64,000 nt of DNA from IMGVR_UViG_3300009103_000001:146158-210157, one strand, 5' to 3'; shown: positions 1,229 through 51,073, counted from the first letter of the stretch. Made by a program: numbers and translations. The notes: a model not told the origin generated them from the letters alone.

Positions 1229-1612
1229 TTAGAACTTTGCTTGTTTATAAATTTGTGTCATACTCCCATCACCTCTATCATTATACTTAGGAACCCTAGG
1301 GTCTCTATCTGATATTGGTGAATAAAAGATTTTTGGGGTTTTAACCCAAGATGTTATTCTATCTGCTCTAAATGTTTTCCATCCAGGTTGGTCAGTATCA
1401 GTAACACCCTCAACTTGGTAGACCCTAATTATTGGATTGCCAGCTTTAGATATACCATAAACATAGGGTTCAATCCATCTCCAACCCTTTTCCATAGTAT
1501 TATCACCCTCATAGTAACATCTTATTGTTCTATGTTTTTCTATGGCGTCCTCAATTTCAGACCTACTTGCATTTTCTAATATAAGATTTTCAAGTAGATA
1601 GTAAAGTTTCAT
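1229..1612 (-). CDS. Stand-alone WYL-like domain protein (start revised to 1612)
   Basis: IRCYY...WRWIEPY...IRVYQ...GWKTFRADRI matches the WYL pattern. ATG at 1612 (MKLYYLLENLILE) lies 1 nt after the upstream stop, so it is preferred to the track start at 1711. Confidence 0.7.
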   Translation of the reverse strand: MKLYYLLENLILENASRSEIEDAIEKHRTIRCYYEGDNTMEKGWRWIEPYVYGISKAGNPIIRVYQVEGVTDTDQPGWKTFRADRITSWVKTPKIFYSPISDRDPRVPKYNDRGDGSMTQIYKQAKF

Positions 1613-1613
1613 T

Positions 1614-1979
1614 TTACCAATATTGTTCACCGAAATTATATGTATAATAGTTAAACCCTGGTTTGTATTTATTACCAGATGAGTAAAGTAATACATCTTT
1701 TCTTTGTTCATCTATAAGTGTTCCAACACCTTGACCAGGACCAACCTCACCCCTACCATGGTCATCACCATCGTGTTGAGCGTTTGGATGTTGTGAACTA
1801 TATCCTTGGTTTGGCACATTCTTATATTCATTAAACGAGGTTTGCTGTGCTCTTTGTACATTACCCTCAACTTTAAGTGATGGTAATTGATTTGTTACAG
1901 CTCCACCATTTGGGTTTAATTCTTGTACTGAAGCAGCGTCTGTTAATATTGGTGCTATAGAAGTTAAATGATGTGACAT
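1614..1979 (-). CDS. Hypothetical protein
   Basis: 121-aa ORF in a tightly packed operon; GTATTTAT motif about 53 nt upstream. Confidence 0.7.
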   Translation of the reverse strand: MSHHLTSIAPILTDAASVQELNPNGGAVTNQLPSLKVEGNVQRAQQTSFNEYKNVPNQGYSSQHPNAQHDGDDHGRGEVGPGQGVGTLIDEQRKDVLLYSSGNKYKPGFNYYTYNFGEQYW

Positions 1980-2455
1980 AATTTTTTATTTTTATTAATT
2001 ATTGTTATAAAGTCTTCCATGACTCTTATATTATAAATACCTTCTTGTCTTAAAATTTTTTTAACATCAGAATCATTATTGTTTATTTTAACATTATCTA
2101 TGTTAATTTCATCTTTTTGATATTGGTTGGGCATCCCAACATTCTTCATGCTACTTTTTTTAGAGTCAATATTATTTCTCATATTACTTAAACTCATATT
2201 TACCCAATCTTTCATTTTTGTTCCACCATTCAAAAGATATGGTGTATCACTTTTTTTACCAGAAAAGTTATCAAAAAAGTTTTTAATTCTTTTTAATTGT
2301 TCATATGATATATTTTTATTATCACACAAATTTTTTAATCTGTTATAACCTTCAACTGTTTTATCACCACAATAAGCATTAAAAATTTTACTTAAATGTT
2401 TATTAACATCCTTATCTATAGTTATTTCTATGCCAACTAATTCACTATTAGCCAT
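1964..2455 (-). CDS. Hypothetical protein
   Basis: 163-aa ORF, start overlaps the stop of the upstream gene. Confidence 0.75.
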   Translation of the reverse strand: MANSELVGIEITIDKDVNKHLSKIFNAYCGDKTVEGYNRLKNLCDNKNISYEQLKRIKNFFDNFSGKKSDTPYLLNGGTKMKDWVNMSLSNMRNNIDSKKSSMKNVGMPNQYQKDEINIDNVKINNNDSDVKKILRQEGIYNIRVMEDFITIINKNKKLCHII

Positions 2456-6073: not shown

Positions 6074-7498
6074 TTATTTCTTACTAGAGTCGATTTTTTC
6101 TTTTAGTTTCTTTACGAAGGTTTGAGCAAATGCTTTCAAAAATCTATTACCATCTTTACCAAAATACATTAAACCAGATATATTAGTAATACATTTATGT
6201 CCGCCACTATTTGCCTGTAACATATCCCAACCAGTTACAGATAATAATTTTAAAGCCTTTTTTTCATTATTACTTAATGAAGTATATGGTTTAGACATTA
6301 CTGTTTTTAGTGCTTTTTGCCATCTTTCTATTGTATAATCTTTTGGGGCCTTTTTAGGCATACTATTTAAACCTATTATGCCGTCATCAGTATCTTCAAA
6401 CATGGCAATCATATCAGTATAATTAAACCCAACAGATTCATCATCAAAAGATTTATGTTTTTCAGCAAAATATTTTATAGTATCTACAGTTATTTTTTTA
6501 CTTTTTAATCTAGATTTATACACATCTAAAACTTCTTGAGCTATTTCACCCAAATTGACACCCTTTAATTCTCTATTAGCTTTGAACGGATTACAAGAAG
6601 ATTGTAATAACCCTAAAGGCCAAGCAATAACTAAAAAATTAGCATCAGGATAATTTTTAAAAGGAACATATCTATCGTAAGAACCGGGTTTAAATAGATT
6701 ACCACCACCATATTGAGCTATAATACCGTAATCTTCTAGGTAAGTCACTTTATCACTGTCTTTTTGTGATTGGATATAATTAGCAATATTTTTTTTCATA
6801 ATATCAGGAGAAACATACCCTTCTTCTTTAGCTAATCTAACTATGTTTAAATAAATGTTTAATAGAGATGGTGTTGATTCTAAAACTAGTCTTTCTAAGA
6901 ATCTTGGTTTATTTTTATAGGCTAATAAAAGTTTATTTGTTACTAAGGCCATTATTTTTTTATTTTTAGATAATTCTTTTTCTTTATCTAATTCAAAAAT
7001 ATAAGTCATAACATCTTCTGGTTTAATACCCATTTTAACAAAATCAGCAGAATCAACTGTTGATATCATTTTAATATCAAAATCTGGAAATATATCTGTT
7101 GGTGAAACTATTTGTGAAATAGTTTCTACGTTAGACCTAGATTGTCTAAAAGATTTTGAAGCTTGTTTTTCAGCACCAACTTGTTTATCGTGATGGTCGG
7201 TATGGACTACAAACATTGGTTTACCGTGAGCAAAGTCAACTAACACAGGCATTATATCACCCTTAGCCGAGGGTTTTTTTATGGCAAACTCTTTATCACC
7301 ATATTGTATAACTTCCGCATCAACAACTTTAATACCATTATTTTCTAAATAATTTTTCATAGCTAAAGCTGTTGTAACACCATCTAAATCTTGGTGAAAG
7401 TATATTTTAGCTTTATCATATCTATTAGATAAATTACGCATATTACGTAAACCACTTTCACTTAATATACTACTTAACATGTTTTCTTTTAATATCAT
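6074..7498 (-). CDS. DHH/DHHA1-family phosphoesterase
   Basis: FHQDLDG, LVDF, TDHH, TVDSAD and C-terminal SGGH motifs. Confidence 0.75.
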   Translation of the reverse strand: MILKENMLSSILSESGLRNMRNLSNRYDKAKIYFHQDLDGVTTALAMKNYLENNGIKVVDAEVIQYGDKEFAIKKPSAKGDIMPVLVDFAHGKPMFVVHTDHHDKQVGAEKQASKSFRQSRSNVETISQIVSPTDIFPDFDIKMISTVDSADFVKMGIKPEDVMTYIFELDKEKELSKNKKIMALVTNKLLLAYKNKPRFLERLVLESTPSLLNIYLNIVRLAKEEGYVSPDIMKKNIANYIQSQKDSDKVTYLEDYGIIAQYGGGNLFKPGSYDRYVPFKNYPDANFLVIAWPLGLLQSSCNPFKANRELKGVNLGEIAQEVLDVYKSRLKSKKITVDTIKYFAEKHKSFDDESVGFNYTDMIAMFEDTDDGIIGLNSMPKKAPKDYTIERWQKALKTVMSKPYTSLSNNEKKALKLLSVTGWDMLQANSGGHKCITNISGLMYFGKDGNRFLKAFAQTFVKKLKEKIDSSKK

Positions 7499-17122: not shown

Positions 17123-17123
17123 A

Positions 17124-20614: not shown

Positions 20615-20626
20615 TATTTAAATGAT

Positions 20627-24590: not shown

Positions 24591-24592
24591 TT

Positions 24593-30211: not shown

Positions 30212-30221
30212 ATATATTAAA

Positions 30222-37382: not shown

Positions 37383-37409
37383 AATATATTTATAGTAAAA
37401 TAGAATATT

Positions 37410-37922: not shown

Positions 37923-37929
37923 TTAAAAA

Positions 37930-38640
37930 ATGACTAAAAGATATAAAATCAGAAAAGAACAATTAGAAAGAGTAGTAGAGTCTTTCGTAATGGAGTCAGC
38001 AGCACCTGAAGCTAAAAAACATGTACAGGGATATAATGATAAAGAAGATGAGTCTTTAGGTATGAGAACTGGTAAGGAATCTACTAAAAAACAATCTGAT
38101 AAAGCTCGTAGAGATGATTCATATGGTAAATGGGGTAAAAGAGGTAAATATGGACCTGAAGCTAAAAAACATAAAATGTCAATGGGAGCTGAACAAACTG
38201 ATGATTCTGGTGAAGGTATGAAAAAACCTTCAGTTGCGAAATCTATGAAGATGAAACACGCTCCTGAAGCTAAAAAACATGTTAAAGGTGGTTCACTTTC
38301 TGAAGCTAAAAAAAAAGAAATAACTAAACTTTTAGAGAATGGTGACATTTCTGAAGCAGAATTACAAGAATTTTTCGGTATTGGTTCTAAAATGAGAAAG
38401 AATAAAATCGAAAAGGAATTAAAAACTAGAGCATTTGCTTGGACAAAAAAGGGAGCAATATCAAAACCTAGTCAACAAGACTTAGATGATATAATGAAAA
38501 AAGCTGAAGAAGATGATTATAGTGGTACTATAAGAATACAAAACGGTAAAATCGCATATCAAACACAAGATGAATTTATGGCTTCTGGTGGTAAATACCA
38601 AGGTTCTGGAAATCCACAAGGAGGTGGTTTTGCTGGTTAA
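37930..38640 (+). CDS. Lys-rich low-complexity protein, probable internal head protein
   Basis: Leader ending FVME; PEAKKH x3 plus SEAKKK. Confidence 0.7.
   Translation: MTKRYKIRKEQLERVVESFVMESAAPEAKKHVQGYNDKEDESLGMRTGKESTKKQSDKARRDDSYGKWGKRGKYGPEAKKHKMSMGAEQTDDSGEGMKKPSVAKSMKMKHAPEAKKHVKGGSLSEAKKKEITKLLENGDISEAELQEFFGIGSKMRKNKIEKELKTRAFAWTKKGAISKPSQQDLDDIMKKAEEDDYSGTIRIQNGKIAYQTQDEFMASGGKYQGSGNPQGGGFAG
38005..38280 (+). repeat. 18-nt exact repeat CCTGAAGCTAAAAAACAT x3 (PEAKKH)
   Basis: At 38005-38022, 38155-38172 and 38263-38280; partial fourth copy at about 38300. Confidence 0.95.
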
Positions 38641-38658
38641 TACTAAATAAAACTAACT

Positions 38659-38690
38659 AAAAAAGGTGTCTAATAGACACCTTTTTTTTT
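38659..38690. terminator. Bidirectional intrinsic terminator
   Basis: AAAAAAGGTGTCT-AAT-AGACACCTTTTTTTTT between convergent genes. Confidence 0.85.
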
Positions 38691-39033
38691 ATAACCTTAT
38701 TTCATATTTTTGTAAAATATGTTTATTATTTTCTTTTAAAATACCACTTGATTCGTAGAACACTATTAAAGTTTTATATGATAAAAAAGCCGTATCTCTA
38801 TTAAATTTTGTTATCTTATGCCAACTATATGTTAAAAAAGACAGTATAAGTACTGGTAAATAAAACATATAACTATATCCTAATAAAAATATAAGTATAG
38901 ATATAATAAATTGTGACATAAAATGATTAAATCTAGTATTAGATTTATCGGTTAATTTATTAACATCATCAACAGATTCTTTTATTTGTGAATCCATTAA
39001 TTTTAATATTTCAATATCATTCATTTTAACCAT
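38689..39033 (-). CDS. Small membrane protein
   Basis: Hydrophobic segment QFIISILIFLLGYSYMFYLPVLILSFLTY; host-type promoter upstream. Confidence 0.65.
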   Translation of the reverse strand: MVKMNDIEILKLMDSQIKESVDDVNKLTDKSNTRFNHFMSQFIISILIFLLGYSYMFYLPVLILSFLTYSWHKITKFNRDTAFLSYKTLIVFYESSGILKENNKHILQKYEIRL

Positions 39034-39059
39034 TTTATTATAAGTATTTTAATATATTA

Positions 39060-39091
39060 CAAATATAGTGAATATTTATATAAAAAACAAA
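39060..39091 (-). promoter_or_regulatory. Bacteroidota-type housekeeping promoter TTTG-N20-TATATTTG
   Basis: CAAATATA at 39060-39067 and CAAA at 39088-39091 on the + strand; 20-nt spacer. Confidence 0.7.
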
Positions 39092-39096
39092 TTTTA

Positions 39097-39957
39097 ATGA
39101 ATAAAATTCTAATAACAGAGTCACAATATGGTAAATTAAGGTCTTTTTTATTGGAAATGAGATTGCGGTCTTATATTTTTGATTGGGACGATAATATACT
39201 TCATATGCCAACTGAGGTATTAATAGACAAAAAAGTTGACGGTGAATGGGTACCAATGTCTATGGCAACAGGTGATTACGCTAAATTTAGAGAAGACCCA
39301 AATTATAGATTAAGAAATAATAAACCTTCCCAAGCTTTTAAATGGTTCTCAGATAATGATGCTTTTATAAAAGATGTTAAAAAGGCAATACATCATGAAA
39401 GTTTTGCACCTAGTTTTAACAAATTTAAAGAAGCTTTAATAAATTCTAATCCATTCGCAATAAATACAGCAAGAGGACATCAACCAACTACAATTAAAAA
39501 AGGTGTAAGAATTTTTATTGATATGGTTTTAACAGATAGTGAAAAAAATGAGATGGTCAATAATATTAGGAAAAATTTAAAATTAGCTGAAGGGTTAAAT
39601 GACGAACAAACCATTGATTTATATTTGGATGAACTGGGTGAGTATTATCCAGTATCTTCAGGTGAGTTTGGCAAGAGATTTGGTTTAGATGTACACGGAA
39701 GTGCAGCTAGTCCTGAACACGCTAAAAAAGTTGCTATAGAACATTTTACTAAAAAAGTATTTGATAATATGGACAAACTTATAAATAGTGGTTATAAAAA
39801 AATGTCTGTTGGATTTTCTGATGACGATTTGGGTAATGTTAGAGCTGCTGAAGAATTTATAGAAAATGAATTAAATAAAATGTACCCTGAGTTACACTTT
39901 GTTGTTTATGATACATCAGATAAGGGTATAAATAAGTTGGTCATCGAAAAAGAGTGA
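39097..39957 (+). CDS. HAD-superfamily hydrolase with N-terminal leader
   Basis: FDWDDN (motif I), NTARG (II), KK (III) and GFSDDD (IV), after MNKILITESQYGKLRSFLLE. Confidence 0.7.
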   Translation: MNKILITESQYGKLRSFLLEMRLRSYIFDWDDNILHMPTEVLIDKKVDGEWVPMSMATGDYAKFREDPNYRLRNNKPSQAFKWFSDNDAFIKDVKKAIHHESFAPSFNKFKEALINSNPFAINTARGHQPTTIKKGVRIFIDMVLTDSEKNEMVNNIRKNLKLAEGLNDEQTIDLYLDELGEYYPVSSGEFGKRFGLDVHGSAASPEHAKKVAIEHFTKKVFDNMDKLINSGYKKMSVGFSDDDLGNVRAAEEFIENELNKMYPELHFVVYDTSDKGINKLVIEKE

Positions 39958-40469
39958 AAAAATTAATCAAAAAAATATTAAAAGAAGAGTCAAAAGATTT
40001 TGATTGGACAAAGTCTGTAGACCCATTAGATGATTTTAGTGATTATTTTTATGGTACTGGTAACTACATCTTTAGAAAAAATACTCCAGGTAGATATATT
40101 AGACGTGATAGTGGTTGGTGGCGTAATTGGATTGAAGACGTTGAAATGGCACACCCAGCTATTATGGAAGATGTGGCAGACCTAGAGGATATGGTTGGGG
40201 ATTTAGTTAATCCAAGAAGAGGAAAAACTAAAGAATATAAAAAGTTAGCTGTTGATGTTTATGAGTTTTTTAAGGGGGTAAGAGTATTGGGTGGTAAGAG
40301 TATTATTGAAGACTCTGCTTCAACAATATTAGATGCTTATAATATCTTTGGTTTATATGCTGAACAAAATAATTTAACAATATTTGAGGTTATGGACATT
40401 TTTACTAGTTGGTTGGATAAAATGGATAATGAAGGTATACCATTACATGACAAGAACAAAGATGGGTAA
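39954..40469 (+). CDS. Hypothetical protein with KKILKE leader
   Basis: GTG start overlaps the previous TGA (GTGA). Confidence 0.75.
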   Translation: MKKLIKKILKEESKDFDWTKSVDPLDDFSDYFYGTGNYIFRKNTPGRYIRRDSGWWRNWIEDVEMAHPAIMEDVADLEDMVGDLVNPRRGKTKEYKKLAVDVYEFFKGVRVLGGKSIIEDSASTILDAYNIFGLYAEQNNLTIFEVMDIFTSWLDKMDNEGIPLHDKNKDG

Positions 40470-42102
40470 ATTAAGTTACATATTAGAAGAGGTTATACTA
40501 GAATCTCGTAGAAAGGATGTTATTGAAAAACATAGAAAAATTTTAGATGGAGGTTTTGGTGATACTTTTGGTGAAAATCCGACACATTTAGACGGTAAAT
40601 GGGTAGATTCTTTTGATGATGTCGTGATTTGGGTGGAAAAGGAGTTATCGCACCCAAAATACTTAGATTTTGTTTTAGGTGGGTTATGTTGTGGCGGATA
40701 TGGTGCAGAACCAGATTATATGGTTGACTTAGTTAATGACTTTCATGAATTATCAGAAAGAAATTACATAGAAAATAAGGATATATACTCCAAGGAATAT
40801 CAATCATCACCTAGTTCTAATTACACAGATTTTAATAGATTAGAAGAAGTTATAGAAAACGCCAAAATAAATTTAGAAAAAAAAGAAACAGAAAAAAGAG
40901 TTAAAAAAGATAAAGTAGTAATATATGAAGATGATAGGTGGCGTGTTATAGTACCTAAAACACATGAAGCTTCTTGTCATTATGGGGCTGGAACAAAATG
41001 GTGTACAACTAGTAAAGACGAGGTTGGTCATTTTACTAATTATACTGATATAGGTATATTATATTATATATTAGATAAAACAAAAACATCTGACGTAGAT
41101 GATGTTATGTATAAAATAGCCTTATTTTTAAGGTATCGTGTAACAAAAGAAGATTTTGGTGATGTTTATACAGCTATACCATTTAATAGGGCGGCAGAAA
41201 TGTTTGATTCACAAGATAGAGAGGTTAATTTTGAACACGTATTACCACTTTTACCAGCTGAGTTAGAAAATAGTGTAATAGCATATTATTATAAGATAAT
41301 AAAAGAAAATAATAATAGATTTGAACATAACACCAAAAAAATGTTTGTAGATAATAATTATCTAAATATTTTTATTGATAAATTTAATACAAAAACACTA
41401 AATGATGACTTTTTTAGTGGTATGGGTACTTTAGATTGGGACGTAAAAAATACTCATGGTTTAGTTTTCTTTAATTTTGGTGACGCGACATATTATTTAT
41501 ATTTTTTACCCACAACCAAAAATAGTGAAAATTCATATTTATATGATTTGTATGTTCGCAAACACGGTAGTGAGGCTAATATTCGAATTGATAAAGAATT
41601 TTTACCAGAAAGACAAATATCTAAAAAACTTAAGTTAGGACAAGATGAAAAATCTATTGTAAATGATATGATGGATTATTCTGTGTATGAGGTTTTAGCG
41701 GCAATAAAAAGACACTATTTTAATAAAAAAATTGAATCTGGTGATTCTAAAACATATATTGAAAAGGATAATACTATATATTGGAAACCTTTAAATAGTG
41801 CCTCTTCTTATAAATTTAAATATCCACCTAAAGAGGGTTCATTAACTTATGAATTTATTAAAGCAGTAAAGGAAAATCCAGGTATAACACCAAAAGAATT
41901 TTATAAAGATAAGTATGATTTTGATTATTATTCTGGGTATAATACACAGTTCTTCGGTTCAATTAAAGATTCGGGTATACTTAGAGTTGAAAAAGGACCA
42001 TATGGAATATTAAAATATTATTTAGGGCCTAATTATGAAGCATGGACAAAGGGTAATATAAAAAGATTACATGGTAGACATAAACCAATACACTTGTGGT
42101 GA
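40462..42102 (+). CDS. Protein with PcfJ-like motif (start revised to 40462)
   Basis: MGKLSYILEEVILE leader; VPKTHEASCHYGAGTKWCTT motif. The track start at 40384 overlaps the upstream gene by 86 nt. Confidence 0.65.
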   Translation: MGKLSYILEEVILESRRKDVIEKHRKILDGGFGDTFGENPTHLDGKWVDSFDDVVIWVEKELSHPKYLDFVLGGLCCGGYGAEPDYMVDLVNDFHELSERNYIENKDIYSKEYQSSPSSNYTDFNRLEEVIENAKINLEKKETEKRVKKDKVVIYEDDRWRVIVPKTHEASCHYGAGTKWCTTSKDEVGHFTNYTDIGILYYILDKTKTSDVDDVMYKIALFLRYRVTKEDFGDVYTAIPFNRAAEMFDSQDREVNFEHVLPLLPAELENSVIAYYYKIIKENNNRFEHNTKKMFVDNNYLNIFIDKFNTKTLNDDFFSGMGTLDWDVKNTHGLVFFNFGDATYYLYFLPTTKNSENSYLYDLYVRKHGSEANIRIDKEFLPERQISKKLKLGQDEKSIVNDMMDYSVYEVLAAIKRHYFNKKIESGDSKTYIEKDNTIYWKPLNSASSYKFKYPPKEGSLTYEFIKAVKENPGITPKEFYKDKYDFDYYSGYNTQFFGSIKDSGILRVEKGPYGILKYYLGPNYEAWTKGNIKRLHGRHKPIHLW

Positions 42103-42638
42103 AAAAAATAATACTTAAAATATTAAATGAAGGTGATTGGGATTGGGTTACAAATATACCACCATTTTTAGAGGTTGGTGACCCAGTTAGTAATAAAAAC
42201 CCAAAAGATAGTTGGAGGGTTATATGGAAAAATGGTTTTGGTGAGGATTATGGTACTTGGACTGATGAGTGGGCCAATATTAATAATAATGTAGAGGGTA
42301 TTGAAAGGTTAGAGTGGTTAATTAAAATTTTAAGTTTTAGTATGAAACCTGAACATAGAGGTCACATACCTATAGAAATATTATCCGAATTAGCTGCCGG
42401 TGGTGAGTCTTGGGTTTTAGGTCCATGGGACACCCAATATCGTAATGAACTAGAAGGTGAGGATAAGGAAGAAGCTATATTTTTAGCTAAAGATTGGTTA
42501 GTAGATTTATTAGAGGATTGGCATATTTTAAATCGTGACGATTATCATGCTTATTATGCAACATTGGAGGCTTGGGAGGTTAGGTATTTTGATAAATATG
42601 GTATAGAACATTTTGTTAAGGTAAATAATCTATGGTAA
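42099..42638 (+). CDS. Hypothetical protein with KILNE-GDWDW leader
   Basis: GTG at 42099 overlaps the TGA of the upstream gene; leader resembles the KKILKEESKDFDW leader at 39954. Confidence 0.7.
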   Translation: MKKIILKILNEGDWDWVTNIPPFLEVGDPVSNKNPKDSWRVIWKNGFGEDYGTWTDEWANINNNVEGIERLEWLIKILSFSMKPEHRGHIPIEILSELAAGGESWVLGPWDTQYRNELEGEDKEEAIFLAKDWLVDLLEDWHILNRDDYHAYYATLEAWEVRYFDKYGIEHFVKVNNLW

Positions 42639-42648
42639 GTCCCTTATC

Positions 42649-43338
42649 TTATTTTTTGTTAGGTTTTCCAATAACCTCATCAATAATTCCATAGTCTAAA
42701 GCCTCATTAGCACTTAACCATAAATCTCTTTGAGCGTCTTTTTCAACTCTTTTAGCGGTTTTACCACAATAACCGGCTAATAATTCAAATAATTCCTTAT
42801 TTATTTTCTCCCACTCGTCAAACCCAATTCTAGCGTCTATTATGTTTCCGCCAACACCACCACTTGATTGGTGTAACATTGTTCTTGAGTGTTTTAGTGA
42901 ACTTCTCATACCCTTTGTACCCGCTCCAAGTAATAATGAACCCATTGAAGCGGCCATACCAGTATTAATTGTCTGTATGTCCGCGTCAATATAACTCATA
43001 ACATCTATCATAGATAATCCAGCTTTAACTGAACCACCTGGTGAGTCAATATGCATTGTTATTGTTTTGTTTGGGTCTTGTTGTGATAAGAATAGTAGTT
43101 GTGCTTGTACTATAATAGCCATCCTATCGTCTACTGGTCCAGCACACCATATAATTCTGTCCATCATTAGTCTGTCAAAAACAGACATTGCGGCCACATT
43201 TAATTGACGTTCTTCTATAATTGTAGGTGTTACTGAATATTCTATGTTTGGAACCTTGGATTGTAGGTTTTGATAACTGTGTAGTGTATTTGAATTTACA
43301 TTCAAATGTTTTGTTGCGTAATTATTAAATTCTGACAT
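42649..43338 (-). CDS. clpP: ATP-dependent Clp protease proteolytic subunit
   Basis: EERQ..VFDRLMMDRII, IDSPGGSV, AASMG (Ser), MLHQ (His), GG..G handle and RDLWLSA.EALDYG.ID. Confidence 0.93.
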   Translation of the reverse strand: MSEFNNYATKHLNVNSNTLHSYQNLQSKVPNIEYSVTPTIIEERQLNVAAMSVFDRLMMDRIIWCAGPVDDRMAIIVQAQLLFLSQQDPNKTITMHIDSPGGSVKAGLSMIDVMSYIDADIQTINTGMAASMGSLLLGAGTKGMRSSLKHSRTMLHQSSGGVGGNIIDARIGFDEWEKINKELFELLAGYCGKTAKRVEKDAQRDLWLSANEALDYGIIDEVIGKPNKK

Positions 43339-43369
43339 TTTTATATTGTTATTAAATTTTTAACTACAT

Positions 43370-43401
43370 CAAAGATATTTATTATTATATAATAAGTCAA
43401 A
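43370..43401 (-). promoter_or_regulatory. Bacteroidota-type promoter TTTG-N20-TATCTTTG upstream of clpP
   Basis: CAAAGATA at 43370-43377 and CAAA at 43398-43401; 20-nt spacer. Confidence 0.7.
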
Positions 43402-43416
43402 TAAAAAAACATTATA

Positions 43417-43806
43417 ATGGCACACGAAAAAAAAGTAGAAGAAATAACATTATACGAAACTGTTGATGGAAAGGTTTTTGAATCTAAGGATTCAGCTTTA
43501 GAACATGAAAATGATATATTAGGTGATGAAGAAGAAAGAGTAACAAAACTTAATATTACAAATGCTTTAGTATCAAATTATAGAAAATATTTAGGGTATA
43601 ACGGTAGTTACGCTGTTTTTGATAAAAGTTATTTAAAACATAAAATTTATTCAATTGCCGCAACATCAAACCCATCAGAAATACTATATAGTTTATTTGT
43701 TGATACACCAGAACACACATTAAAGTTACTTTTGGATATGAAAAGTAACGACCTTAAAGGCTATGAAGCAATAAGTGACGAAGAAGTAGAAGTAGTTGAA
43801 AAATAA
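43417..43806 (+). CDS. Hypothetical protein
   Basis: N-terminal Y.T.DG..F.....A..HE motif shared with the next gene. Confidence 0.7.
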   Translation: MAHEKKVEEITLYETVDGKVFESKDSALEHENDILGDEEERVTKLNITNALVSNYRKYLGYNGSYAVFDKSYLKHKIYSIAATSNPSEILYSLFVDTPEHTLKLLLDMKSNDLKGYEAISDEEVEVVEK

Positions 43807-43829
43807 TTTATAAATAAAAAAAATATAAA

Positions 43830-44168
43830 ATGAAATCTTACGTAAGATACAAAACATCGGATGGACAATATCATGATGATGAAAAATCGGCAAACACACA
43901 TCAAAATAATTTAAATAGAAAAAATTTAAAAACATATCGTGTAGAACAATATAACGCAATGTTAGATAGATTGTCTGGGAAAAATGATATATGGAAAAAT
44001 ATTAAAAATAATAAGTACGATTCTTCTGATTCTAATGAGATTATACTTAAAATTTTTACTGAGTATAATAGAGACTTAATATTATTAGCCACTAATAACG
44101 CACATGAAGCCGGTGAATTACCAATAGAGGGCCCTGGTCTTATTGCTAGACCCAAAATAGCCGAATAA
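43830..44168 (+). CDS. Hypothetical protein, paralog of 43417-43806
   Basis: YKTSDGQYHDDEKSANTHQ aligns with YETVDGKVFESKDSALEHE. Confidence 0.7.
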   Translation: MKSYVRYKTSDGQYHDDEKSANTHQNNLNRKNLKTYRVEQYNAMLDRLSGKNDIWKNIKNNKYDSSDSNEIILKIFTEYNRDLILLATNNAHEAGELPIEGPGLIARPKIAE

Positions 44169-44170
44169 AA

Positions 44171-46411
44171 ATGGATGAAAAAAAATATAATAACGCGTTA
44201 ACATTATTAGAAGAAAAAGAACTAGAAAAATTAAAACTAGACCTTTTAGAATGCTTAAAAGATATAGAATCTTTAAATGATAAAGTTTTCTTAACTGAAA
44301 GTGAAAAAATGTTAATGGAGGTTTCATTGTGGGATAAAGCTAAATATTATCTAGGTAAGATAGGTAGGTATAAAGCTGGGGGAAAAATATTTGGTAAGAA
44401 AAAGGTAGACCAAGAAGCGGCAGAAAAAATAGAAACAATATTAAATAAAAAGGGTAACGAATTTATTAAAAATCTTCACACAACAATCCAAAAAATGAAT
44501 AAAGGTGAAGATGGTAAAGGAAAGGGTGAATTTCCAAATAATATGGACCCTGAAATATTTTTAGAAATAGTTTTAACAATCGCAGCAACATATGACTCAA
44601 TTGTTGGGGCAACTAAAAAAGATGCTGAAGATGAAGGGTTTTTACCTGTTGATATGGCGAATAAAATAATTGCCGACCTTAGAGATTATGTTAAAAAATA
44701 TTTAGATGTAGATGTACAGTGGACACGTTCAATATTTGACCATGAAGAAGAATCTGATGGTGATTTATTAAATGAAAAATGGACTGACAAGGTTTGGAAT
44801 TTTGTTACTGGTGGTGGTAAAGATGATAAACATAAAGAAGTTAGAACAAAATTACAGGGTAAGGTAGGTAAGGATTCAGAAAAATTCGATTCTGAAAGAA
44901 TGAAAACACTATACTCTAATAAACTACCTTTAATACTTAGTGCTATAGGTGGTTCTTTAGGGGCTCTAGGTTGGTTAGCTCAAACAGATTGGTTAAAAAG
45001 TTTATTGGAGTCTTGGTTAAATACCGATGGTGTTCCAGGTCAAGATGCTGTAACACAATCTTTTGATGGTGGTAATGCAGACCCTGAAGGGATGGTTCAT
45101 TGGATGAGAGAAATTGACCCTAGTAATCCAGTTGAAACCGGTTCTGATATTAGTGATTTTATTAGTAAACATGGGGCGGAAAATGTTAGTCATATGTTTG
45201 ATGGTAATGGTGCTGGTGATTCTATGGAACAAATCGGTAAATTAAAAGACTTAATCGGTGGCGATGGAGCCAATCAAAGTGTTGGTGAGTTATTTAGGGG
45301 TGATACCTATGGTGACATGAAGGGGGGTAGAAATTTATTTGGTATTAGTAAGGCAGCCTCATTTGCGTCTAAGGTTATTGTTAAACAAGCGGTTAAAGCT
45401 ACGGCTGGTTCTGTTGCTGGAACAGTTTTAGCGGGTAAATTAGCCTTTTTAGGTTCTATACTGTTACCTATAGGTATAGGTATTTTAGGGACTGGTATTT
45501 TAGTTAAAACCATGAGGGTTAAGGGTAGAAACCAATCTAGAAGTAGGACATTGGATGATTTACTGCAATCATTACAGGATATTAAACCAACAAAAGTAAA
45601 CCCACCAATAATAGAACCAGACCCACCAGGACCAGGACCAGAGCCCGATGTAGACCCAGAGTTCTTAAAGGGAAATAGGAATATGCAATTAGCCCATTTA
45701 TCAAAATTATTTTTACCAATCGGTGAAGATTTTTGGTCACGATTGGGATTAAAAGATGGAACAAAAATACCTAGTGGATTTTTAGATGCAGCGTTAGCAC
45801 AAGGAAAACCAAACCAAGAAAAATATTTAAATGCCTATTATGACCATTTGGTTAAAAACAATTCTTTCACTAAGGAGGTCAGTAAAGATGATTGGATTAT
45901 GACAACACTAAAACAATCAGATAATTTAGCTTTAATAAGGTGGATTAGAAATACTAGAAAAGGTATAGGTAGTTTCTTAAATGCTTTAAGAAAGGCTTTT
46001 GATGATTTTAGTATTGGTGATAGAGCTAAGGCTAAACCATTAAGACCTGGAAAAGAAGGTGAAGCTATGGCTTTAGCTGGTGGTCAAACAGATGAGTCAA
46101 TAAAAAAAGAAGATAATTTACTCGTAGAAGTTGGTTTGGGGAAAATCGCTGGAGCGGCTGGTTTTGATGAAAATTTATTTATGAAAAATTTACCACAGTT
46201 TATGGCTATGTTAAGTGCTATGTATTATAGTACGAAAGGAGAACCATTACCATATGATGGTGAAGCTGTAATGAAAAGGTGTGAAAAGTATGGGTGTAAA
46301 GCCGGCTCTGATAAGACATATGAAAAAACAAAATCCGATGATTACCAATTTATGGAACAATCATCTAAATTAACAGAAGAAATTAAAAGAATTAAAAATT
46401 TAATGCAATAA
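44171..46411 (+). CDS. Large protein with two hydrophobic segments, candidate internal/ejection protein
   Basis: 746 aa; several L-x-E sites; Gly-rich hydrophobic helices; C-terminal LTEEIKRIKNLM. Confidence 0.6.
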   Translation: MDEKKYNNALTLLEEKELEKLKLDLLECLKDIESLNDKVFLTESEKMLMEVSLWDKAKYYLGKIGRYKAGGKIFGKKKVDQEAAEKIETILNKKGNEFIKNLHTTIQKMNKGEDGKGKGEFPNNMDPEIFLEIVLTIAATYDSIVGATKKDAEDEGFLPVDMANKIIADLRDYVKKYLDVDVQWTRSIFDHEEESDGDLLNEKWTDKVWNFVTGGGKDDKHKEVRTKLQGKVGKDSEKFDSERMKTLYSNKLPLILSAIGGSLGALGWLAQTDWLKSLLESWLNTDGVPGQDAVTQSFDGGNADPEGMVHWMREIDPSNPVETGSDISDFISKHGAENVSHMFDGNGAGDSMEQIGKLKDLIGGDGANQSVGELFRGDTYGDMKGGRNLFGISKAASFASKVIVKQAVKATAGSVAGTVLAGKLAFLGSILLPIGIGILGTGILVKTMRVKGRNQSRSRTLDDLLQSLQDIKPTKVNPPIIEPDPPGPGPEPDVDPEFLKGNRNMQLAHLSKLFLPIGEDFWSRLGLKDGTKIPSGFLDAALAQGKPNQEKYLNAYYDHLVKNNSFTKEVSKDDWIMTTLKQSDNLALIRWIRNTRKGIGSFLNALRKAFDDFSIGDRAKAKPLRPGKEGEAMALAGGQTDESIKKEDNLLVEVGLGKIAGAAGFDENLFMKNLPQFMAMLSAMYYSTKGEPLPYDGEAVMKRCEKYGCKAGSDKTYEKTKSDDYQFMEQSSKLTEEIKRIKNLMQ

Positions 46412-46467: not shown

Positions 46468-46956
46468 ATGGCAGATTTGCTGATGAGGATGCCCGTACCG
46501 TATGAACCAAAGAAAAAGAATAGGTTTATATTTAGATTTCCTACACCACTTGGTATTCAAGAATGGTTTGTGGCATCAGGTTCAAGACCTAGCGTCACTA
46601 TAGAAGAAACTGAAATACAGTTTTTAAATACCTCAACTTTTGTTGCTGGTAGATTTACATGGGAGACAATTGATGTTACATTCCGTGACCCAATTGGTCC
46701 TTCAGCAGCTCAAGCCCTTATGGAATGGGTTCGTTTACACGCTGAATCTGTTACTGGTAGAATGGGTTACGCAGCTGGTTATAAAAAAGATGTAGAATTA
46801 GAATTACTAGACCCAACAGGTGTTGTAATCGAGAAATGGATTTTACAAGGTACTTTCTTAACTGGTGTTAACTTCAACGATTTAGATTACTCTTCAAGTG
46901 ATATAGCTGATATTAACGCTACACTTAGATTTGATAGAGCAGTACACGTATTCTAG
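46468..46956 (+). CDS. Tail tube protein (T4 gp19-like)
   Basis: EPKKKNRFIF, FVAGRFTWETIDVTFRDPI, WVRLHAES.TGRMGYAAGYKK and EKWILQG.F. Confidence 0.92.
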   Translation: MADLLMRMPVPYEPKKKNRFIFRFPTPLGIQEWFVASGSRPSVTIEETEIQFLNTSTFVAGRFTWETIDVTFRDPIGPSAAQALMEWVRLHAESVTGRMGYAAGYKKDVELELLDPTGVVIEKWILQGTFLTGVNFNDLDYSSSDIADINATLRFDRAVHVF

Positions 46957-48336: not shown

Positions 48337-49092
48337 ATGTCTACAGAAAAAAATGAAATAAGTTTTGAAACGCCCTTTGATGTATTAGAATTACCATCAA
48401 AAGGTCTGTTATATCCAGGTCGACCAGAAACAGTTAAAGTTGAATATCTTACGGCCGCAGATGAAAATATTTTAACATCCCCAAATTTAATTAGAAGTGG
48501 TAAAGTTTTAGATGTTCTTTTAGAAAAAAAGATTAAAAGTACCGAAATACCAATGAAAGATATGTTAGTTGGTGATAGAAATGCTATTATGATTTGGTTA
48601 AGAGCGACAGGATATGGTGAAATGTATCCAGTTAGAATGGCTGACCCTATTACTGGTGAGGAATTTGAAACGGAAATAGATTTATCGAACTTAAAAACTA
48701 AGGAGTTGACAGCTCAACCAGATGAAAATGGTGAATTTAGTTTTGATTTACCAAGAAGTAAAAAGAAAGTTAAATTTAAACTTTTGACCGTTGGTGATGA
48801 AACTAGTATTGCTAAAAAATCGGAAATTAGAGGTAAAAACACACAAATTAGTAACGCTTTAACATATAGACTACAAGCACAAATTAAGGAAATTGATGGG
48901 AATAGAGACCCTAATGTGATATCAAGATTTGTAAATGTAATGCCAGCCTACGATTCACTTAAATTTAGAGAATATTCGGATGATATTGAACCAGGAATAG
49001 ATTTAGAGGTGGACGTGGAGGGTCCATCTGGCCCCTTTCGTAGTCCCTTTACAATTGGACTCAACTTTTTTTGGCCTAACGCCAGAGTATAG
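48337..49092 (+). CDS. Tail assembly chaperone / baseplate hub assembly protein (T4 gp26-like)
   Basis: LELPSKG..Y, LTAADENIL, GDRNAIMIWLRATGYG; located between tube and tape measure. Confidence 0.75.
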   Translation: MSTEKNEISFETPFDVLELPSKGLLYPGRPETVKVEYLTAADENILTSPNLIRSGKVLDVLLEKKIKSTEIPMKDMLVGDRNAIMIWLRATGYGEMYPVRMADPITGEEFETEIDLSNLKTKELTAQPDENGEFSFDLPRSKKKVKFKLLTVGDETSIAKKSEIRGKNTQISNALTYRLQAQIKEIDGNRDPNVISRFVNVMPAYDSLKFREYSDDIEPGIDLEVDVEGPSGPFRSPFTIGLNFFWPNARV

Positions 49093-49270
49093 AAAAAATT
49101 TAATAGAACAAATTTATTATATGGTTAAACATATGAACTTCGGTTATATCGAAGTTCAATACATGCCTGTATATGAAAGACGTGTTTATTTAGATATGTG
49201 GCAAAAAGAGATGGAAGAACAACATAAACAACATAAACAAGCCCAAGCTAAAAGTAGGCGTAAAAGGTAA
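49055..49270 (+). CDS. Short chaperone partner (gp51/gpT-like), probably a frameshift extension of the upstream gene
   Basis: Only a TTG start, inside the upstream gene; YMVKHMNF...MPVYERRVYL..W..E pattern; T7 run at the overlap. Confidence 0.6.
   Translation: MDSTFFGLTPEYRKNLIEQIYYMVKHMNFGYIEVQYMPVYERRVYLDMWQKEMEEQHKQHKQAQAKSRRKR
49066..49072 (+). other. Candidate programmed frameshift slippery site (T7)
   Basis: AAC TTT TTT TGG in frame 0 versus ACT TTT TTT GGC in the +1 frame. Confidence 0.55.
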
Positions 49271-49300
49271 TTAATGGATATTTATTAATAAAAACTTTTT

Positions 49301-51073
49301 ATGACCAAAAAATTAATGGATATTATAAAAGAAGATGTTCCTTCAGAACTTCAACAATATAAGAAACCATATGATAAAATGATGAAATCTGCGTCAGATG
49401 ACACAGAAATGGTTCAGGCAAAACTAAGAGGTAGTGATGATGATTTGGACTCCGCCGCATCTAAATTTGGCATGGGGTCTGGTTTAGATTTTTATCCATT
49501 AGTTTCCATGGAAAAACCCTTCAATACAGCATTTGAGGTTAAATTTGTTGGTGCTAAAATACCTGTTCATTGGAAGGGTGAAAAATCAGAAATAGAAGGT
49601 GATTCAGAGGTAGATTCGTTTAATGCGGTAATTTGGTTAGACCCAGAGTCTTTTAAAAAAGTTAAAGGTGGTTCTACAGATGATGAATACAAATTCAAAA
49701 TTGTTAAAATTGATAACAAAGAGTTAAATGATAATTATTTAATTTTTAGAGGTAATGAAATAAACATTACAGATAAAAGAGTAGGTAAGGTTACACCACA
49801 ATTAAGTACTAGTAAAAAATATAATATAAATATATCTATCGGTGATGATGAGGTTACTGGTGGAGATGGTGGTGATACTGAAGGTGGTGACGTTGATGTA
49901 CCAGAAGAAATAGCTAACGGTAGGAATAGAAATGAGATATTTAGATTGTTATTAAATAGGTTTGGTGGTTTTAATGGTTATGTTGTTCATGGTGATGGAT
50001 TTAAAAATATTGAGGACGCTAGAGCCTATGGTAGGTTATTAAAAGCTATAAAAGCCGGAAAAGAAGATGAGTCAAAGGCAAAAGAATTTAGAGATAAAGT
50101 TAATAGAGATTCATATGCTATGATGATTTCTAATCTTAGAAAATCATTTCCTAGTAATTTTTTATCAAAACTATCAAAAGCTTTTCCAGAGTTTAACATA
50201 ACTTTCAATAAAGAAAGTATTGGAGAAAATATTGTTAAACAAAATTTATTAGAAGAAGAAAATTCAGACAAATATAAAAGGTGGAATATTGTATTTCCTG
50301 GTAAGGTTGTTGGTGGTAAGTCTATAGATGCTTTGGATAAAAATATTATTAATTTTATGAAAGCCGTTAAAAAATGGTTTGCTGTGCCAATAGATTATAG
50401 AGGAAAAAAACAATCATATACAATAAATTATGATGAAGATAAGGTTAATAAATATTTTTCAACTTTTTATAGTAAAAAGGAGAGTATGCTATCTATTGGT
50501 AATATCTTGAATGAAATAGTTAAAGATAGATTACATGAAGATGATGAAAATATTGGAACTGATACAGAAAAAAAACAGAAAATAGAACCAAAAATACAAT
50601 TAATTTTTAATAAAATAGAAGTTAAAGGTATGAAACGTGGTGAACAAAATTATAGTGATGATGATTTTGATAGAACAGCAAAATCTTTATCAGGTGGTGG
50701 TAAAGTAGAATTAAAGATTTCAAATTTTGAATTTAAAGATTCTTTAGATAAGATTAAGGAAAAAGCTGAAAAATCTAGTAAAAATTTCAGTTCAGGAGAG
50801 GTAGAATCTTTTATAGATGTATTAAAAAACATGAATAATAATACTGTTGGTTTAAAATCCGATAGAGAAAATTTAATGTTAAATATTGGTAAAACTAAAC
50901 TAAATAAAAATATATGGTTAAACATACCTATTAAAGATAATGGGGGTGATTTAAATGTTTTACTTAAAAAATTAGGTAATGGTGATACCTTTATTAAATG
51001 TAGTATAGCTTATGCTGACCCATACGACCCATTCATTAAGGATGATATTGTTATTAAATTAAAGTTAAAATAA
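49301..51073 (+). CDS. Hypothetical protein with DIIKE leader, candidate internal head protein
   Basis: 590 aa; internal LLEEE, ILNE and LHE sites; shares a domain with the 44171-46411 protein. Confidence 0.7.
   Translation: MTKKLMDIIKEDVPSELQQYKKPYDKMMKSASDDTEMVQAKLRGSDDDLDSAASKFGMGSGLDFYPLVSMEKPFNTAFEVKFVGAKIPVHWKGEKSEIEGDSEVDSFNAVIWLDPESFKKVKGGSTDDEYKFKIVKIDNKELNDNYLIFRGNEINITDKRVGKVTPQLSTSKKYNINISIGDDEVTGGDGGDTEGGDVDVPEEIANGRNRNEIFRLLLNRFGGFNGYVVHGDGFKNIEDARAYGRLLKAIKAGKEDESKAKEFRDKVNRDSYAMMISNLRKSFPSNFLSKLSKAFPEFNITFNKESIGENIVKQNLLEEENSDKYKRWNIVFPGKVVGGKSIDALDKNIINFMKAVKKWFAVPIDYRGKKQSYTINYDEDKVNKYFSTFYSKKESMLSIGNILNEIVKDRLHEDDENIGTDTEKKQKIEPKIQLIFNKIEVKGMKRGEQNYSDDDFDRTAKSLSGGGKVELKISNFEFKDSLDKIKEKAEKSSKNFSSGEVESFIDVLKNMNNNTVGLKSDRENLMLNIGKTKLNKNIWLNIPIKDNGGDLNVLLKKLGNGDTFIKCSIAYADPYDPFIKDDIVIKLKLK

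What the first reader, a model, noticed from the sequence alone, without database searches (positions are those of the whole stretch)
1229..51073. Shared hydrophobic-x-E leader on many unrelated proteins: candidate capsid-targeting and prohead-protease cargo system that includes enzymes
Seen: otherwise unrelated ORFs begin with a basic/amphipathic leader ending in a hydrophobic-x-E. Examples: WYL (LLENLILE), DHH (ILKE..SILSE), 37410 (STLKE), 37930 (SFVME), HAD 39097 (ILITE..FLLE), 39954 (KKILKE), 40462 (EEVILE), 42099 (KILNE) and 49301 (DIIKE). Related C-terminal tails are ILKESLENFNKLINY and LTEEIKRIKNLM. Several of these genes sit behind the ATATTTAT late-type motif rather than the host promoter. 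Known: T4 gp21 cleaves after (I/L)-x-E, and T4 internal proteins carry a short removable capsid-targeting leader ending in E. Inference: this phage tags a varied cargo, including a phosphoesterase, a HAD hydrolase and a WYL protein, for packaging, maturation and injection with the DNA. That would give an enzymatic payload acting before phage gene expression.
Basis: partly seen in the sequence, partly recalled or inferred. Interest (0 to 1): 0.82.

Follow-up and report, generated by a model that had tools for sequence, protein, structure and literature searches.

The report
Shared N-terminal tag on phage proteins
A short, portable helix is attached to the front of many unrelated proteins in this uncultured giant T4-like phage and in about ten thousand metagenomic protein families; it looks like the tag phage T4 uses to load proteins into its head, but that function is not shown.

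Summary
"Hydrophobic-x-E" near an N-terminus is close to chance: 22 of 46 genes have it, against 29% of internal windows.

A longer amphipathic motif is far above chance. It has a short form (M-K-x-h-h-K-K-h-h-x-E) and a long form (h-R-L-T-E-S-D-L-x-x-h-V-K-R-h-h-x-E). It heads six consecutive genes between tail sheath and tail tube, plus the DHH and WYL genes.

- In related phages it sits on at least 20-50 unrelated protein bodies and on about 5% of ORFs.
- It is virtually absent from cellular genomes.
- A profile of it matches 9,561 protein clusters, mostly at residue 1.
- It is the best conserved part of its proteins, yet AlphaFold places it outside the fold.

The phage is a jumbo T4-superfamily myovirus of more than 300 kb. 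Head modules from related contigs, recovered with a capsid protein as query, carry a gp21-type prohead protease and a capsid-protein site of the form L-x-x-E followed by A, S or T. Some encode tagged mini-proteins inside the head operon.

A T4-like capsid-targeting, cleavable leader is the best explanation, at about 45%. It remains untested, and several facts fit it poorly. The C-terminal tails, gene 49301 and the "late" promoter claim are not supported.

The parts
37410..46411 (+). Variable gene island inserted between the tail sheath and tail tube genes. Six of its eight plus-strand genes carry the tag.
   Evidence: In Mel-JY01 and Flavobacterium phage immuto the sheath gene is followed directly by the tube gene. 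The island's content varies among 80 related loci.
37410..37469 (+). Long-form tag (type A, 20 aa, ...L-V-I-E-S-T-L-K-E) of gene 37410-37922. The body is acidic and hypervariable, with a conserved C-terminal F-N-K-L-I-N-Y.
   Evidence: Column conservation is 0.8-0.9 over residues 1-17 and drops to 0.2-0.3 after residue 20 across 21 relatives. It shows cross-family similarity.
37930..37995 (+). Long-form tag (type B, 22 aa, ...Q-L-E-R-V-V-E-S-F-V-M-E) of gene 37930-38640. The body is basic.
   Evidence: It is conserved in 28 relatives whose bodies diverge (129-304 aa).
39097..39156 (+). Long-form tag (type C, I-L-I-T-E-S-Q...F-L-L-E) of gene 39097-39957, a protein with HAD-like motifs.
   Evidence: In alignment A2, Glu8 is at least 90% conserved. 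Distant relatives and huge-phage homologues align only from residue 23. In the AlphaFold model the tag has pLDDT 66-73 and the core above 90.
39954..39986 (+). Short-form tag (type D, M-K-K-L-I-K-K-I-L-K-E) of gene 39954-40469. The GTG start overlaps the upstream stop codon.
   Evidence: It scores 35.3 bits with a matrix trained on other genomes; the null maximum is 4.4.
40462..40503 (+). Tag-like start (K-L-S-Y-I-L-E-E-V-I-L-E) of gene 40462-42102.
   Evidence: Its first ~50 residues are homologous to those of the WYL protein (blastp E=0.002). Relatives keep h-h-L-E followed by S or G then R. Its C-terminal domain recurs behind canonical short tags in other phages.
42099..42131 (+). Short-form tag (M-K-K-I-I-L-K-I-L-N-E) of gene 42099-42638, followed by D-W-D-W.
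   Evidence: It scores 12.3 bits. In family alignment A3 the invariant residues are concentrated in the first 23 positions. In the AlphaFold model residues 1-36 have pLDDT about 50 and the domain above 80.
7457..7498 (-). Degenerate tag (M-I-L-K-E-N-M-L-S-S-I-L-S-E) of the DHH-like gene 6074-7498, which lies beside polB.
   Evidence: Relatives L140 and L207 carry the canonical short tag, and L199 and L130 a 7-residue one. All keep h-h-x-E followed by S-G or T-G. The Pfam DHH match is weak (E=0.0011, below cut-off).
1574..1612 (-). Tag-like start (M-K-L-Y-Y-L-L-E-N-L-I-L-E) of the WYL gene, taken to start at Met34 (gene 1229-1612).
   Evidence: Pfam WYL E=4.4e-5. The public gene call is 133 aa. 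A metagenomic protein pairs the long tag with a weak WYL_2 match.
49301..49333 (+). It is a weak candidate only, in a baseplate/tape-measure neighbourhood.
   Evidence: Matrix empirical p=0.03. No informative relatives were found.
37386..37393 (+). Promoter-like ATATTTAT in front of 37410. Further copies sit at 34509 (sheath), 39072, 43375, 46425 (tube), 49278 and 53764.
   Evidence: Ten of 15 plus-strand copies lie 17-56 nt upstream of a start codon. The motif is general, not late-specific.
34554..37337 (+). Tail sheath gene, the left anchor of the island.
   Evidence: Pfam Phage_sheath_1 and Phage_sheath_1C. The closest cultured relative is Mel-JY01 at 31% identity.
46468..46956 (+). Tail tube gene (gp19-like), the right anchor of the island.
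   Evidence: Pfam Phage_T4_gp19 is weak. It is 84-93% identical in related loci.
42649..43338 (-). ClpP-family protease gene inside the island, on the opposite strand.
   Evidence: Pfam CLP_protease at 200 bits. It is present in the island of relatives whose sheath is at least 64% identical. No link to the tag is shown.

Best explanation
The tag is a portable targeting peptide of 11-22 residues. It forms an amphipathic, basic helix that ends in h-h-x-Glu. The proposal is that it docks otherwise unrelated small, soluble phage proteins onto the very acidic scaffolding core of the T4-type prohead. There the gp21-type prohead protease would cut after the Glu, as it does at L/I-x-E sites in T4, so that the cargo stays in the head with the DNA and can be ejected into the next cell.

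Shown here:
- The motif exists, is portable, and sits mainly at N-termini.
- It is restricted to viruses and lies outside the predicted fold.
- Related phages have the protease and matching sites in their capsid protein.

Inferred, not shown: docking to the scaffold, cleavage, presence in virions, and injection.
For: - T4-superfamily morphogenesis genes are present.
- Seventy-three head loci of the wider clade have both a gp21-like protease and the capsid gene. The capsid protein has L-(I/L)-(N/T/S)-E followed by A, S or T where T4 gp23 has F-L-T-E|A. Scaffold N-termini read K-K-S-I-I-E-E-A-L-L-E.
- T4 leaders read directly from NC_000866 have the same h-h-x-E ending: IPII/IPIII ...E-F-I-A-E|A, gp24 ...E-L-L-R-E|S, gp22 ...Q-L-I-A-E|A.
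- The tag's length matches the 10-20 residue T4 capsid-targeting sequences (PMC5694885).
- Unrelated bodies share only the tag, as in T4 internal proteins (PMC3012670).
- Conservation stops at the Glu, and a variable hydrophilic linker follows.
- DHH relatives keep h-h-x-E followed by S-G or T-G behind leaders of 7 to 25 residues.
- The tag is unstructured relative to the domain in AlphaFold models.
- It is virtually absent from 596 Gb of cellular genomes, where the only match read as genuine lies on a viral contig in a Prochlorococcus single-cell assembly; IMG/VR gave at least 120 matches before the scan stopped.
- Tagged mini-proteins lie between protease and scaffold genes in L233, L234, L291 and L314 and, by coordinates, L235.
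- Some proteins consist of the tag plus a poly-lysine run, which looks like a DNA-neutralising internal protein.
- Tagged proteins are small (median 174 aa) and very hydrophilic.
Against: - No proteomic or N-terminal data exist, and no cultured relative was found.
- This genome's own capsid and protease genes were not found.
- About 5% of ORFs carry the tag. They include replication-cluster genes (DHH, WYL) and a GP88/L5-gp82-like protein.
- Tagged genes are not enriched in head modules: 5 of 268 genes between portal and capsid.
- Internal second and third copies occur.
- The residue after the final Glu is Glu in 61% of short tags.
- A D-F-D-W motif is conserved beyond the proposed cut in 30 of 132 short tags.
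- There is no sequence homology to the T4 capsid-targeting sequence, and the tag pattern finds nothing in the T4, Mel-JY01 or immuto stretches held.
Confidence: 0.45

Rival explanations
1. The tag is a phage-specific docking or sorting helix for a partner other than the prohead. It would bind a common phage-encoded hub, compartment or chaperone, or co-assemble clients with one another. Its resemblance to protease sites would be incidental.
For: - The tag is virus-only, portable, conserved above the body and outside the fold.
- Internal and repeated copies exist.
- About 5% of ORFs carry it, including replication-cluster genes.
- A second conserved motif, D-F-D-W, follows it in 23% of short tags.
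- Most tagged genes lie in accessory regions of small genes.
Against: - No candidate receptor has been identified.
- It does not explain why both conserved Glu residues sit in L/I/V-x-E contexts that match the clade's capsid maturation site.
- It does not explain the tagged genes inside head operons.
Confidence: 0.28
2. The tag is a membrane-targeting amphipathic helix, like the MinD or FtsA targeting sequences. It would bring soluble phage proteins to the inner membrane.
For: It is a short cationic amphipathic helix with hydrophobic residues at i, i+1, i+4 and i+5. The comparison with MinD and FtsA rests on my own knowledge.
Against: - It is followed at once by acidic residues.
- It is absent from cellular proteins of any host.
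- Its clients are nucleotide or nucleic-acid type enzymes and poly-lysine peptides.
- Long forms carry several acidic residues on the helix.
Confidence: 0.08
3. The tag is a nucleotide-level cassette. The conserved 5' coding stretch would act as an A/U-rich translation-initiation enhancer for hosts that do not use Shine-Dalgarno sequences, or as a recombination linker for gene shuffling. The peptide would be a by-product.
For: - Codons 7-9 are AAA-ATA-TTA in 86-98% of short tags, although ATA makes up only 39% of Ile codons in the protein bodies.
- The stretch is very A/T-rich.
- TATTTAT often lies 6-16 nt upstream.
Against: - The other positions use synonymous codons at body frequencies.
- The free position 3 is polar in about 95% of cases, using G/C-containing codons.
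- Long forms keep the same hydrophobic periodicity with different codons.
- Internal copies without a Met exist.
- Nothing is conserved upstream.
- Host genomes lack it.
Confidence: 0.05
4. The tag is an N-terminal degradation signal for a Clp protease, read by host ClpX or ClpA together with the ClpP encoded inside the island. It would time the removal of these proteins.
For: - A bona fide ClpP gene sits in the island and is conserved there.
- The Met-basic-hydrophobic start resembles published ClpX N-motifs (own knowledge).
Against: - More distant relatives (sheath about 45-53% identical) have tagged genes in the sheath-tube gap but no ClpP there.
- ClpP lies on the opposite strand.
- Nothing is tested.
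Confidence: 0.05
5. The pattern is chance or compositional. Lys, Ile, Leu and Glu are common in an AT-rich genome, and Lys codons are favoured after start codons.
For: The loose h-x-E motif is no commoner at N-termini than expected. Many ordinary genes start M-K, M-S-K or M-N-K.
Against: - Cross-family N-terminal similarity is 539 pairs against 9.
- Tag frequency is 5.5% at true starts against 0.35% at internal Met positions.
- A 34-position profile matches 9,561 library proteins at E<=0.001.
- Six consecutive genes carry it in the window.
Confidence: 0.02

Closest known systems
Capsid targeting sequence (CTS) of phage T4 internal proteins IPI/IPII/IPIII, and the short propeptides of gp24, gp22, gp67 and gp68
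   Same: - An N-terminal peptide of 10-20 residues that ends in h-h-x-Glu.
- It is the only element shared by otherwise unrelated proteins.
- The phage lineage has a gp21-type protease that cuts after L/I-x-E.
- Cargo genes are scattered in variable regions (PMC9026906, PMC3012670, PMC5694885).
   Different: - There is no sequence homology to M-K-T-Y-Q-E-F-I-A-E.
- The tag is strongly basic.
- It comes in a short and a two-part long form, each part with its own h-x-E.
- It is used on about 5% of ORFs rather than a handful.
- It sometimes occurs as internal repeats.
- It is often followed by a second conserved motif.
- Function is untested.
N-terminal propeptides of head and ejection proteins in phiKZ-like giant phages (phiKZ, 201phi2-1, SPN3US)
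   Same: These are giant phages in which many head-internal proteins are processed after Glu by a gp21 homologue, with redundant cleavage sites in the propeptides (PMC9026906, PMC10052503).
   Different: Those propeptides are mostly long (over 100 residues) and family-specific. Their cleavage motif is S/A/G-x-E, and no common portable leader has been described. The present phage is not phiKZ-like.
Phage P1 Dar protein packaging (N-terminal capsid-targeting signal of DarB, dependent on DarA/Hdf)
   Same: It is an N-terminal signal that directs anti-defence enzymes into the head for co-injection. This rests on my own knowledge; PMC9024508 and PMC12810830 appeared but were not read.
   Different: It is a single system with a few clients, has no shared short consensus tag, and belongs to a different head lineage.

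Membership tests
T4-type capsid targeting / prohead-protease-cleaved leader | Short (10-20 aa) peptide at the extreme N-terminus | tested here: met
   - The tag is 11 aa (short form) or 20-22 aa (long form).
- All 152 IMG/VR matches lie at ORF starts.
- About 135 of the top 150 profile hits start within the first 15 residues.
- A minority of proteins have extra internal copies.
T4-type capsid targeting / prohead-protease-cleaved leader | Ends in the protease motif (L/I)-x-E, followed by a small residue | tested here: inconclusive
   - h-h-x-E is conserved: A3 has I8, L9 and E11 invariant, A2 has E8 at 90% or more, and DHH relatives keep it.
- In the wider set the next residue is most often A, then S.
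- In strict short tags the next residue is E in 61%.
T4-type capsid targeting / prohead-protease-cleaved leader | The same leader on otherwise unrelated proteins | tested here: met
   - The tag joins roughly 20-25 body families around the sheath.
- 109 short-tag proteins fall into 49 body families.
- The bodies include DHH, WYL, a HAD-like protein, GP88/L5-gp82 and zinc-ribbon proteins.
T4-type capsid targeting / prohead-protease-cleaved leader | The phage encodes a gp21-family prohead protease and T4-type scaffold and capsid proteins | tested here: inconclusive
   These are present in 73 head loci of the wider clade. The head module of this genome was not recovered in about 125 kb examined nor by two capsid-protein searches.
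T4-type capsid targeting / prohead-protease-cleaved leader | Sequence homology to the T4 CTS | tested here: not met
   Only the general pattern M-K-x-h...h-h-x-E is shared. The tag pattern finds nothing in the T4, Mel-JY01 or immuto stretches held.
T4-type capsid targeting / prohead-protease-cleaved leader | The leader is removed by the prohead protease during maturation | not testable with these tools
   This needs N-terminal proteomics or an in-vitro cleavage assay.
T4-type capsid targeting / prohead-protease-cleaved leader | The leader is sufficient to load a foreign protein into the head, and the cargo is found in virions | not testable with these tools
   No cultured member was found. All database relatives are metagenomic 'hypothetical protein' entries.
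   - Invariant D-W-D-D-N, T-A-R-G, K and G-F-S-D-D-D lie in HAD order.
- There is no Pfam hit and no PDB profile hit.
- A confident AlphaFold model (pLDDT 85.7) has no Foldseek match at E<0.1; the best HAD protein, cN-IIIB, scores E=0.43.

The most novel reading that the evidence does not exclude
The tag is not a T4-style head-loading leader. It would instead be the address label of a previously unrecognised virus-encoded protein-sorting system. One conserved helix, N-terminal or repeated internally, would deliver about 5% of the proteome of a large group of uncultured jumbo phages to a single phage-made receptor or assembly. That amounts to about 10^4 client families in public data.
Probability: 0.28. 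Interest if true: 0.9.

Novelty: new variant of a known kind. Interest (0 to 1): 0.78.

Why it matters
If the tag is a head-loading signal, it works as a sequence "zip code". It would let one read from sequence alone the set of proteins that thousands of uncultured giant phages carry in their capsids and inject ahead of gene expression. That set is where anti-defence and host-takeover factors are expected.

T4 has a handful of such proteins. Here the repertoire would run to tens per genome and about 10^4 families.

It would also offer a natural, compact tag for loading foreign proteins into phage heads of Bacteroidota-type hosts.

Even if the function is different, a conserved unit that no Pfam model matched in the ten proteins scanned, found on 9,561 protein clusters, is a large piece of viral dark matter made testable.

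Tried and rejected
- **Head module of this genome.** I walked about 48 kb beyond the window's right end and about 10 kb beyond its left with the look-up of encoding contigs (7 look-ups), and ran two IMG/VR searches with clade capsid proteins. The module was not found.
- **Cultured relatives with virion proteomes.** I ran tblastn of 39097, 40462, 37930, a tagged protein from the Prochlorococcus single-cell viral contig, and a 40-aa leader. The results were only uncultured huge phages, irrelevant hits, or nothing.
- **Literature.** String searches for the motif found no paper.
- **ESM Atlas.** Searches for 44171 and 39954 gave no usable lead.
- **Protein family scans.** Pfam and PHROGs on island proteins and on ten large tagged proteins came back mostly empty.
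- **Foldseek.** The search with the HAD-like model gave no significant match.
- **Rejected: tagged window proteins as paralogues.** There is no body similarity except the WYL/40462 N-terminal region.
- **Rejected: ATATTTAT as a late-specific promoter**.
- **Rejected: a shared C-terminal tail system**.
- **Rejected: ClpP as the prohead protease.** The clade has gp21-type proteases.
- **Caveat on the Glu residues.** Their invariance in alignment A4 is not evidence, because my selection pattern required them. Their conservation rests instead on A2, A3 and the DHH relatives.

Full report
**What the window is.**
- It is about 30% G+C and has no close relative among 50,697 phage records.
- It encodes a tail sheath, a gp19-like tube, a T4 baseplate hub, ClpP, patatin, a SET domain protein and a methyltransferase. 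It also encodes a WYL protein and a weak DHH match.
- The sheath's nearest cultured relatives are Microcystis phage Mel-JY01 (31% identity) and Flavobacterium phage immuto.
- The window is the last 64 kb of a 210-kb JGI contig. The genome continues on a 97-kb contig carrying gp32, DnaB, RNR, gp25 and large baseplate proteins.
- This is therefore a jumbo T4-superfamily myovirus of more than 300 kb. A CHU_C-domain protein hints at a Bacteroidota host.
- In Mel-JY01 and immuto the sheath is followed directly by the tube. Window 37.4-46.4 kb is therefore an inserted island, and its content varies among 80 related IMG/VR loci.

**Checking the observation.** [ILVMF]-x-E occurs in the first 25 residues of 22 of 46 genes and of 14 of 37 unflagged genes. 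It occurs in 29% of internal windows.

Aligning the flagged N-termini shows a longer amphipathic pattern, h-h-x-x-h-h-x-E, preceded by basic residues. Relatives resolve it into two forms:
- a short form, M-K-x-L-I-K-K-I-L-K-E;
- a long form, about M-K-K-h-I-R-L-T-E-S-D-L-x-x-L-V-K-R-h-I-x-E, whose second half is the short form.

One orthologous family (Y-M-F-F-S-N-L-E-Q) carries either form, so the two are interchangeable.

Statistics for the strict motif:
- Among 669 ORFs in 117 body families, the first 30 residues give 539 cross-family similar pairs (62 family pairs). Residues 36-65 give 9 pairs (4 family pairs).
- A pattern for the motif hits the six-frame window 11 times, 6 of them at gene starts.
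- A matrix trained only on other genomes scores 39954 at 35 bits and 42099 at 12 bits, above all 3,150 null windows.
- In head-module loci chosen without regard to the tag, 5.5% of ORFs start with it, against 0.35% of internal-Met pseudo-starts.
- About 64 further genes of this genome lack it. Six of its eight tagged genes in the unbiased sample are consecutive genes of the island.

**How widespread it is.**
- A degenerate DNA pattern for the short form found at least 120 IMG/VR stretches before the scan reached its limit.
- These yielded 152 ORFs, all at true starts. The 109 unique complete proteins fall into 49 body families. Four more lie elsewhere on this phage's own contig.
- The same pattern found 13 stretches in 596 Gb of cellular genomes. 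Those inspected were chance matches or not at an ORF start. The only match I take as genuine lies on a 63,985-bp contig of a Prochlorococcus single-cell assembly, the same length as an IMG/VR viral contig that carries two tag matches.
- A 34-position profile of 35 long forms matched 9,561 of 1.84 billion cluster representatives at E<=0.001. About 135 of the top 150 matches begin within the first 15 residues.
- None of ten hits scanned had a significant Pfam match over the motif. All listed database members are metagenomic, and nearly all are named 'hypothetical protein' or unnamed. Literature string searches found nothing.

**Anatomy.** The tag is an add-on to the proteins that carry it.
- HAD-like relatives in more distant phages have a shortened leader or none. 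Huge-phage homologues align only from residue 23.
- DHH relatives carry leaders of 7 to 25 residues in front of a fixed h-h-x-E followed by S-G or T-G.
- The C-terminal domain of 40462 recurs behind short tags in other phages.
- In the families following the sheath, conservation is 0.8-0.9 through the tag and collapses after the Glu.
- In the 42099 family the invariant residues cluster in the first 23 positions. AlphaFold nevertheless gives residues 1-36 a pLDDT of about 50 and the domain above 80. In the HAD-like protein the tag has pLDDT 66-73 and the core above 90.
- High conservation outside the fold is what a partner-binding peptide looks like.
- Tagged proteins are smaller (median 174 against 247 aa) and much more hydrophilic than other ORFs.

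**Protein level or nucleotide level?** Most tag codons vary synonymously at body frequencies. The free third position is polar in about 95% of cases, often with G/C-containing codons. Long forms keep the same periodicity with different codons. Internal copies without a Met exist. Nothing is conserved upstream except a frequent TATTTAT. Selection is therefore mainly on the peptide. One unexplained point remains: codons 7-9 are AAA-ATA-TTA in 86-98% of short tags.

**Evidence bearing on the head-loading idea.** I recovered about 100 head modules of the wider clade.
- Their gene order is terminase, portal, a protein of about 255 aa, small genes, a gp21-like protease, a very acidic scaffold of 410-560 aa, then the capsid protein.
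- Where T4 gp23 is cut (F-L-T-E|A), these capsid proteins read L-(I/L)-(N/T/S)-E followed by A, S or T.
- Scaffold and post-portal proteins begin with h-h-x-E helices.
- T4's own cleaved N-termini, read from its genome, end in the same way. Their length range is 10-20 residues (PMC5694885).
- In L233, L234, L291 and L314, between one and four tagged mini-proteins lie between the protease and scaffold genes. L235 has three at the corresponding coordinates.
- Some mini-proteins consist of the tag plus a poly-lysine run.
- T4 internal proteins are described as diverse defence proteins that share only the targeting sequence (PMC3012670). The targeting sequence is seen as a way for T4-like phages to incorporate varied proteins (PMC9026906).

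**What fits poorly.**
- The tag is on about 5% of ORFs, including DHH beside polB, WYL in the replication cluster, and a GP88/L5-gp82-like protein.
- Tagged genes are not enriched in head modules.
- Second and third internal copies occur.
- Glu follows the final Glu in 61% of short tags.
- A D-F-D-W motif persists beyond the proposed cut in 23% of short tags.
- There is no virion evidence, and the head module of this genome was not found.

**Sub-claims.**
- ATATTTAT is a real promoter-like motif shared with the sheath and tube genes. Its core TATTTAT precedes 33% of all ORFs and 43% of tagged ORFs in related loci, so "late" is unproven.
- The two C-terminal tails are conserved only within their own families.
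- Gene 49301 is unsupported.
- The 'HAD' label rests on motif order alone.

**Verdict.** This is a genuine, widespread and apparently undescribed portable peptide tag. A T4-like capsid-targeting, protease-cleaved leader is the best single explanation, at about 0.45. A different phage-specific docking or sorting role comes next, at about 0.28.

Noticed in passing
L168:4250-4873:+ and L336:18806-19318:+ (same genome, outside the window); L186:6027-6650; L217:4514-5137: These proteins of about 170-207 aa have first ~75 residues homologous to the N-terminal propeptide and N-arm of T4-type major capsid proteins (W-x-x-L-G-L-L-E-G-L...). An h-x-S-E sits where the capsid protein is matured. They may be capsid-propeptide mimics, which would be a second route into the prohead.
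   Followed up: partly
L113:4897-5322:-, L194:4562-4999:+, L104:3099-3512:-: These ORFs of 137-145 aa are homologous only to a central stretch of gp23 (T4 residues 248-308). They are flanked by tagged genes. Their meaning is unknown.
   Followed up: no
window 47151-48176 (-): A conserved MH-clan (M20/M42-like) metallopeptidase-like gene sits between the tube and baseplate hub genes. The matches are weak (Pfam E=4.5e-4; PDB acetylornithine deacetylase E=0.003). Together with ClpP at 42649-43338, the tail module holds two unusual peptidase genes.
   Followed up: partly
short-tag codons 7-9 across loci L099-L218: Lys-Ile-Leu is encoded as AAA-ATA-TTA in 86-98% of 129 unique leaders, although ATA makes up only 39% of Ile codons in the bodies. 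This is partial nucleotide-level conservation and is unexplained.
   Followed up: partly
L267:11247-11348:-, L281:4972-5073:-, L292:7582-7683:-, L304:9557-9823:-: These mini-proteins of 79-88 aa consist of the long tag followed by a run of 10-14 lysines.
   Followed up: no
window 12176-31478 (+): A run of very large, mutually similar proteins (932, 1216 and 715 aa, 40-43% identical) ends in the same ...S-G-R-T-T-D-V-P-T tail. Repeat-rich 1648-aa and 1129-aa proteins lie alongside. They are probably a family of tail fibres.
   Followed up: no
window 58442-63880 (+) and L010:6831-9437: An 1812-aa baseplate-region protein has weak Hint/intein-splicing Pfam hits. It is followed by an 868-aa Phage_lysozyme2 protein.
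   Followed up: no
window 7681-8100 (+), 32262-34266 (+); L336:13934-16007: Accessory genes of cellular type are present. They include a secreted CHU_C-domain protein (a hint of a Bacteroidota host), a SET-domain protein, a methyltransferase and a patatin-like phospholipase. On the second contig there is a phosphate-selective porin O/P gene and a PHO4-like transporter gene.
   Followed up: no
proteins P0001, P0003, P0005, P0008, P0057: These metagenomic proteins carry two or three copies of the long tag, dividing them into modules. One cluster holds both a 288-aa two-tag form and 136-aa single-module forms. This suggests fusion and fission of tagged modules, or polyprotein-like processing.
   Followed up: partly
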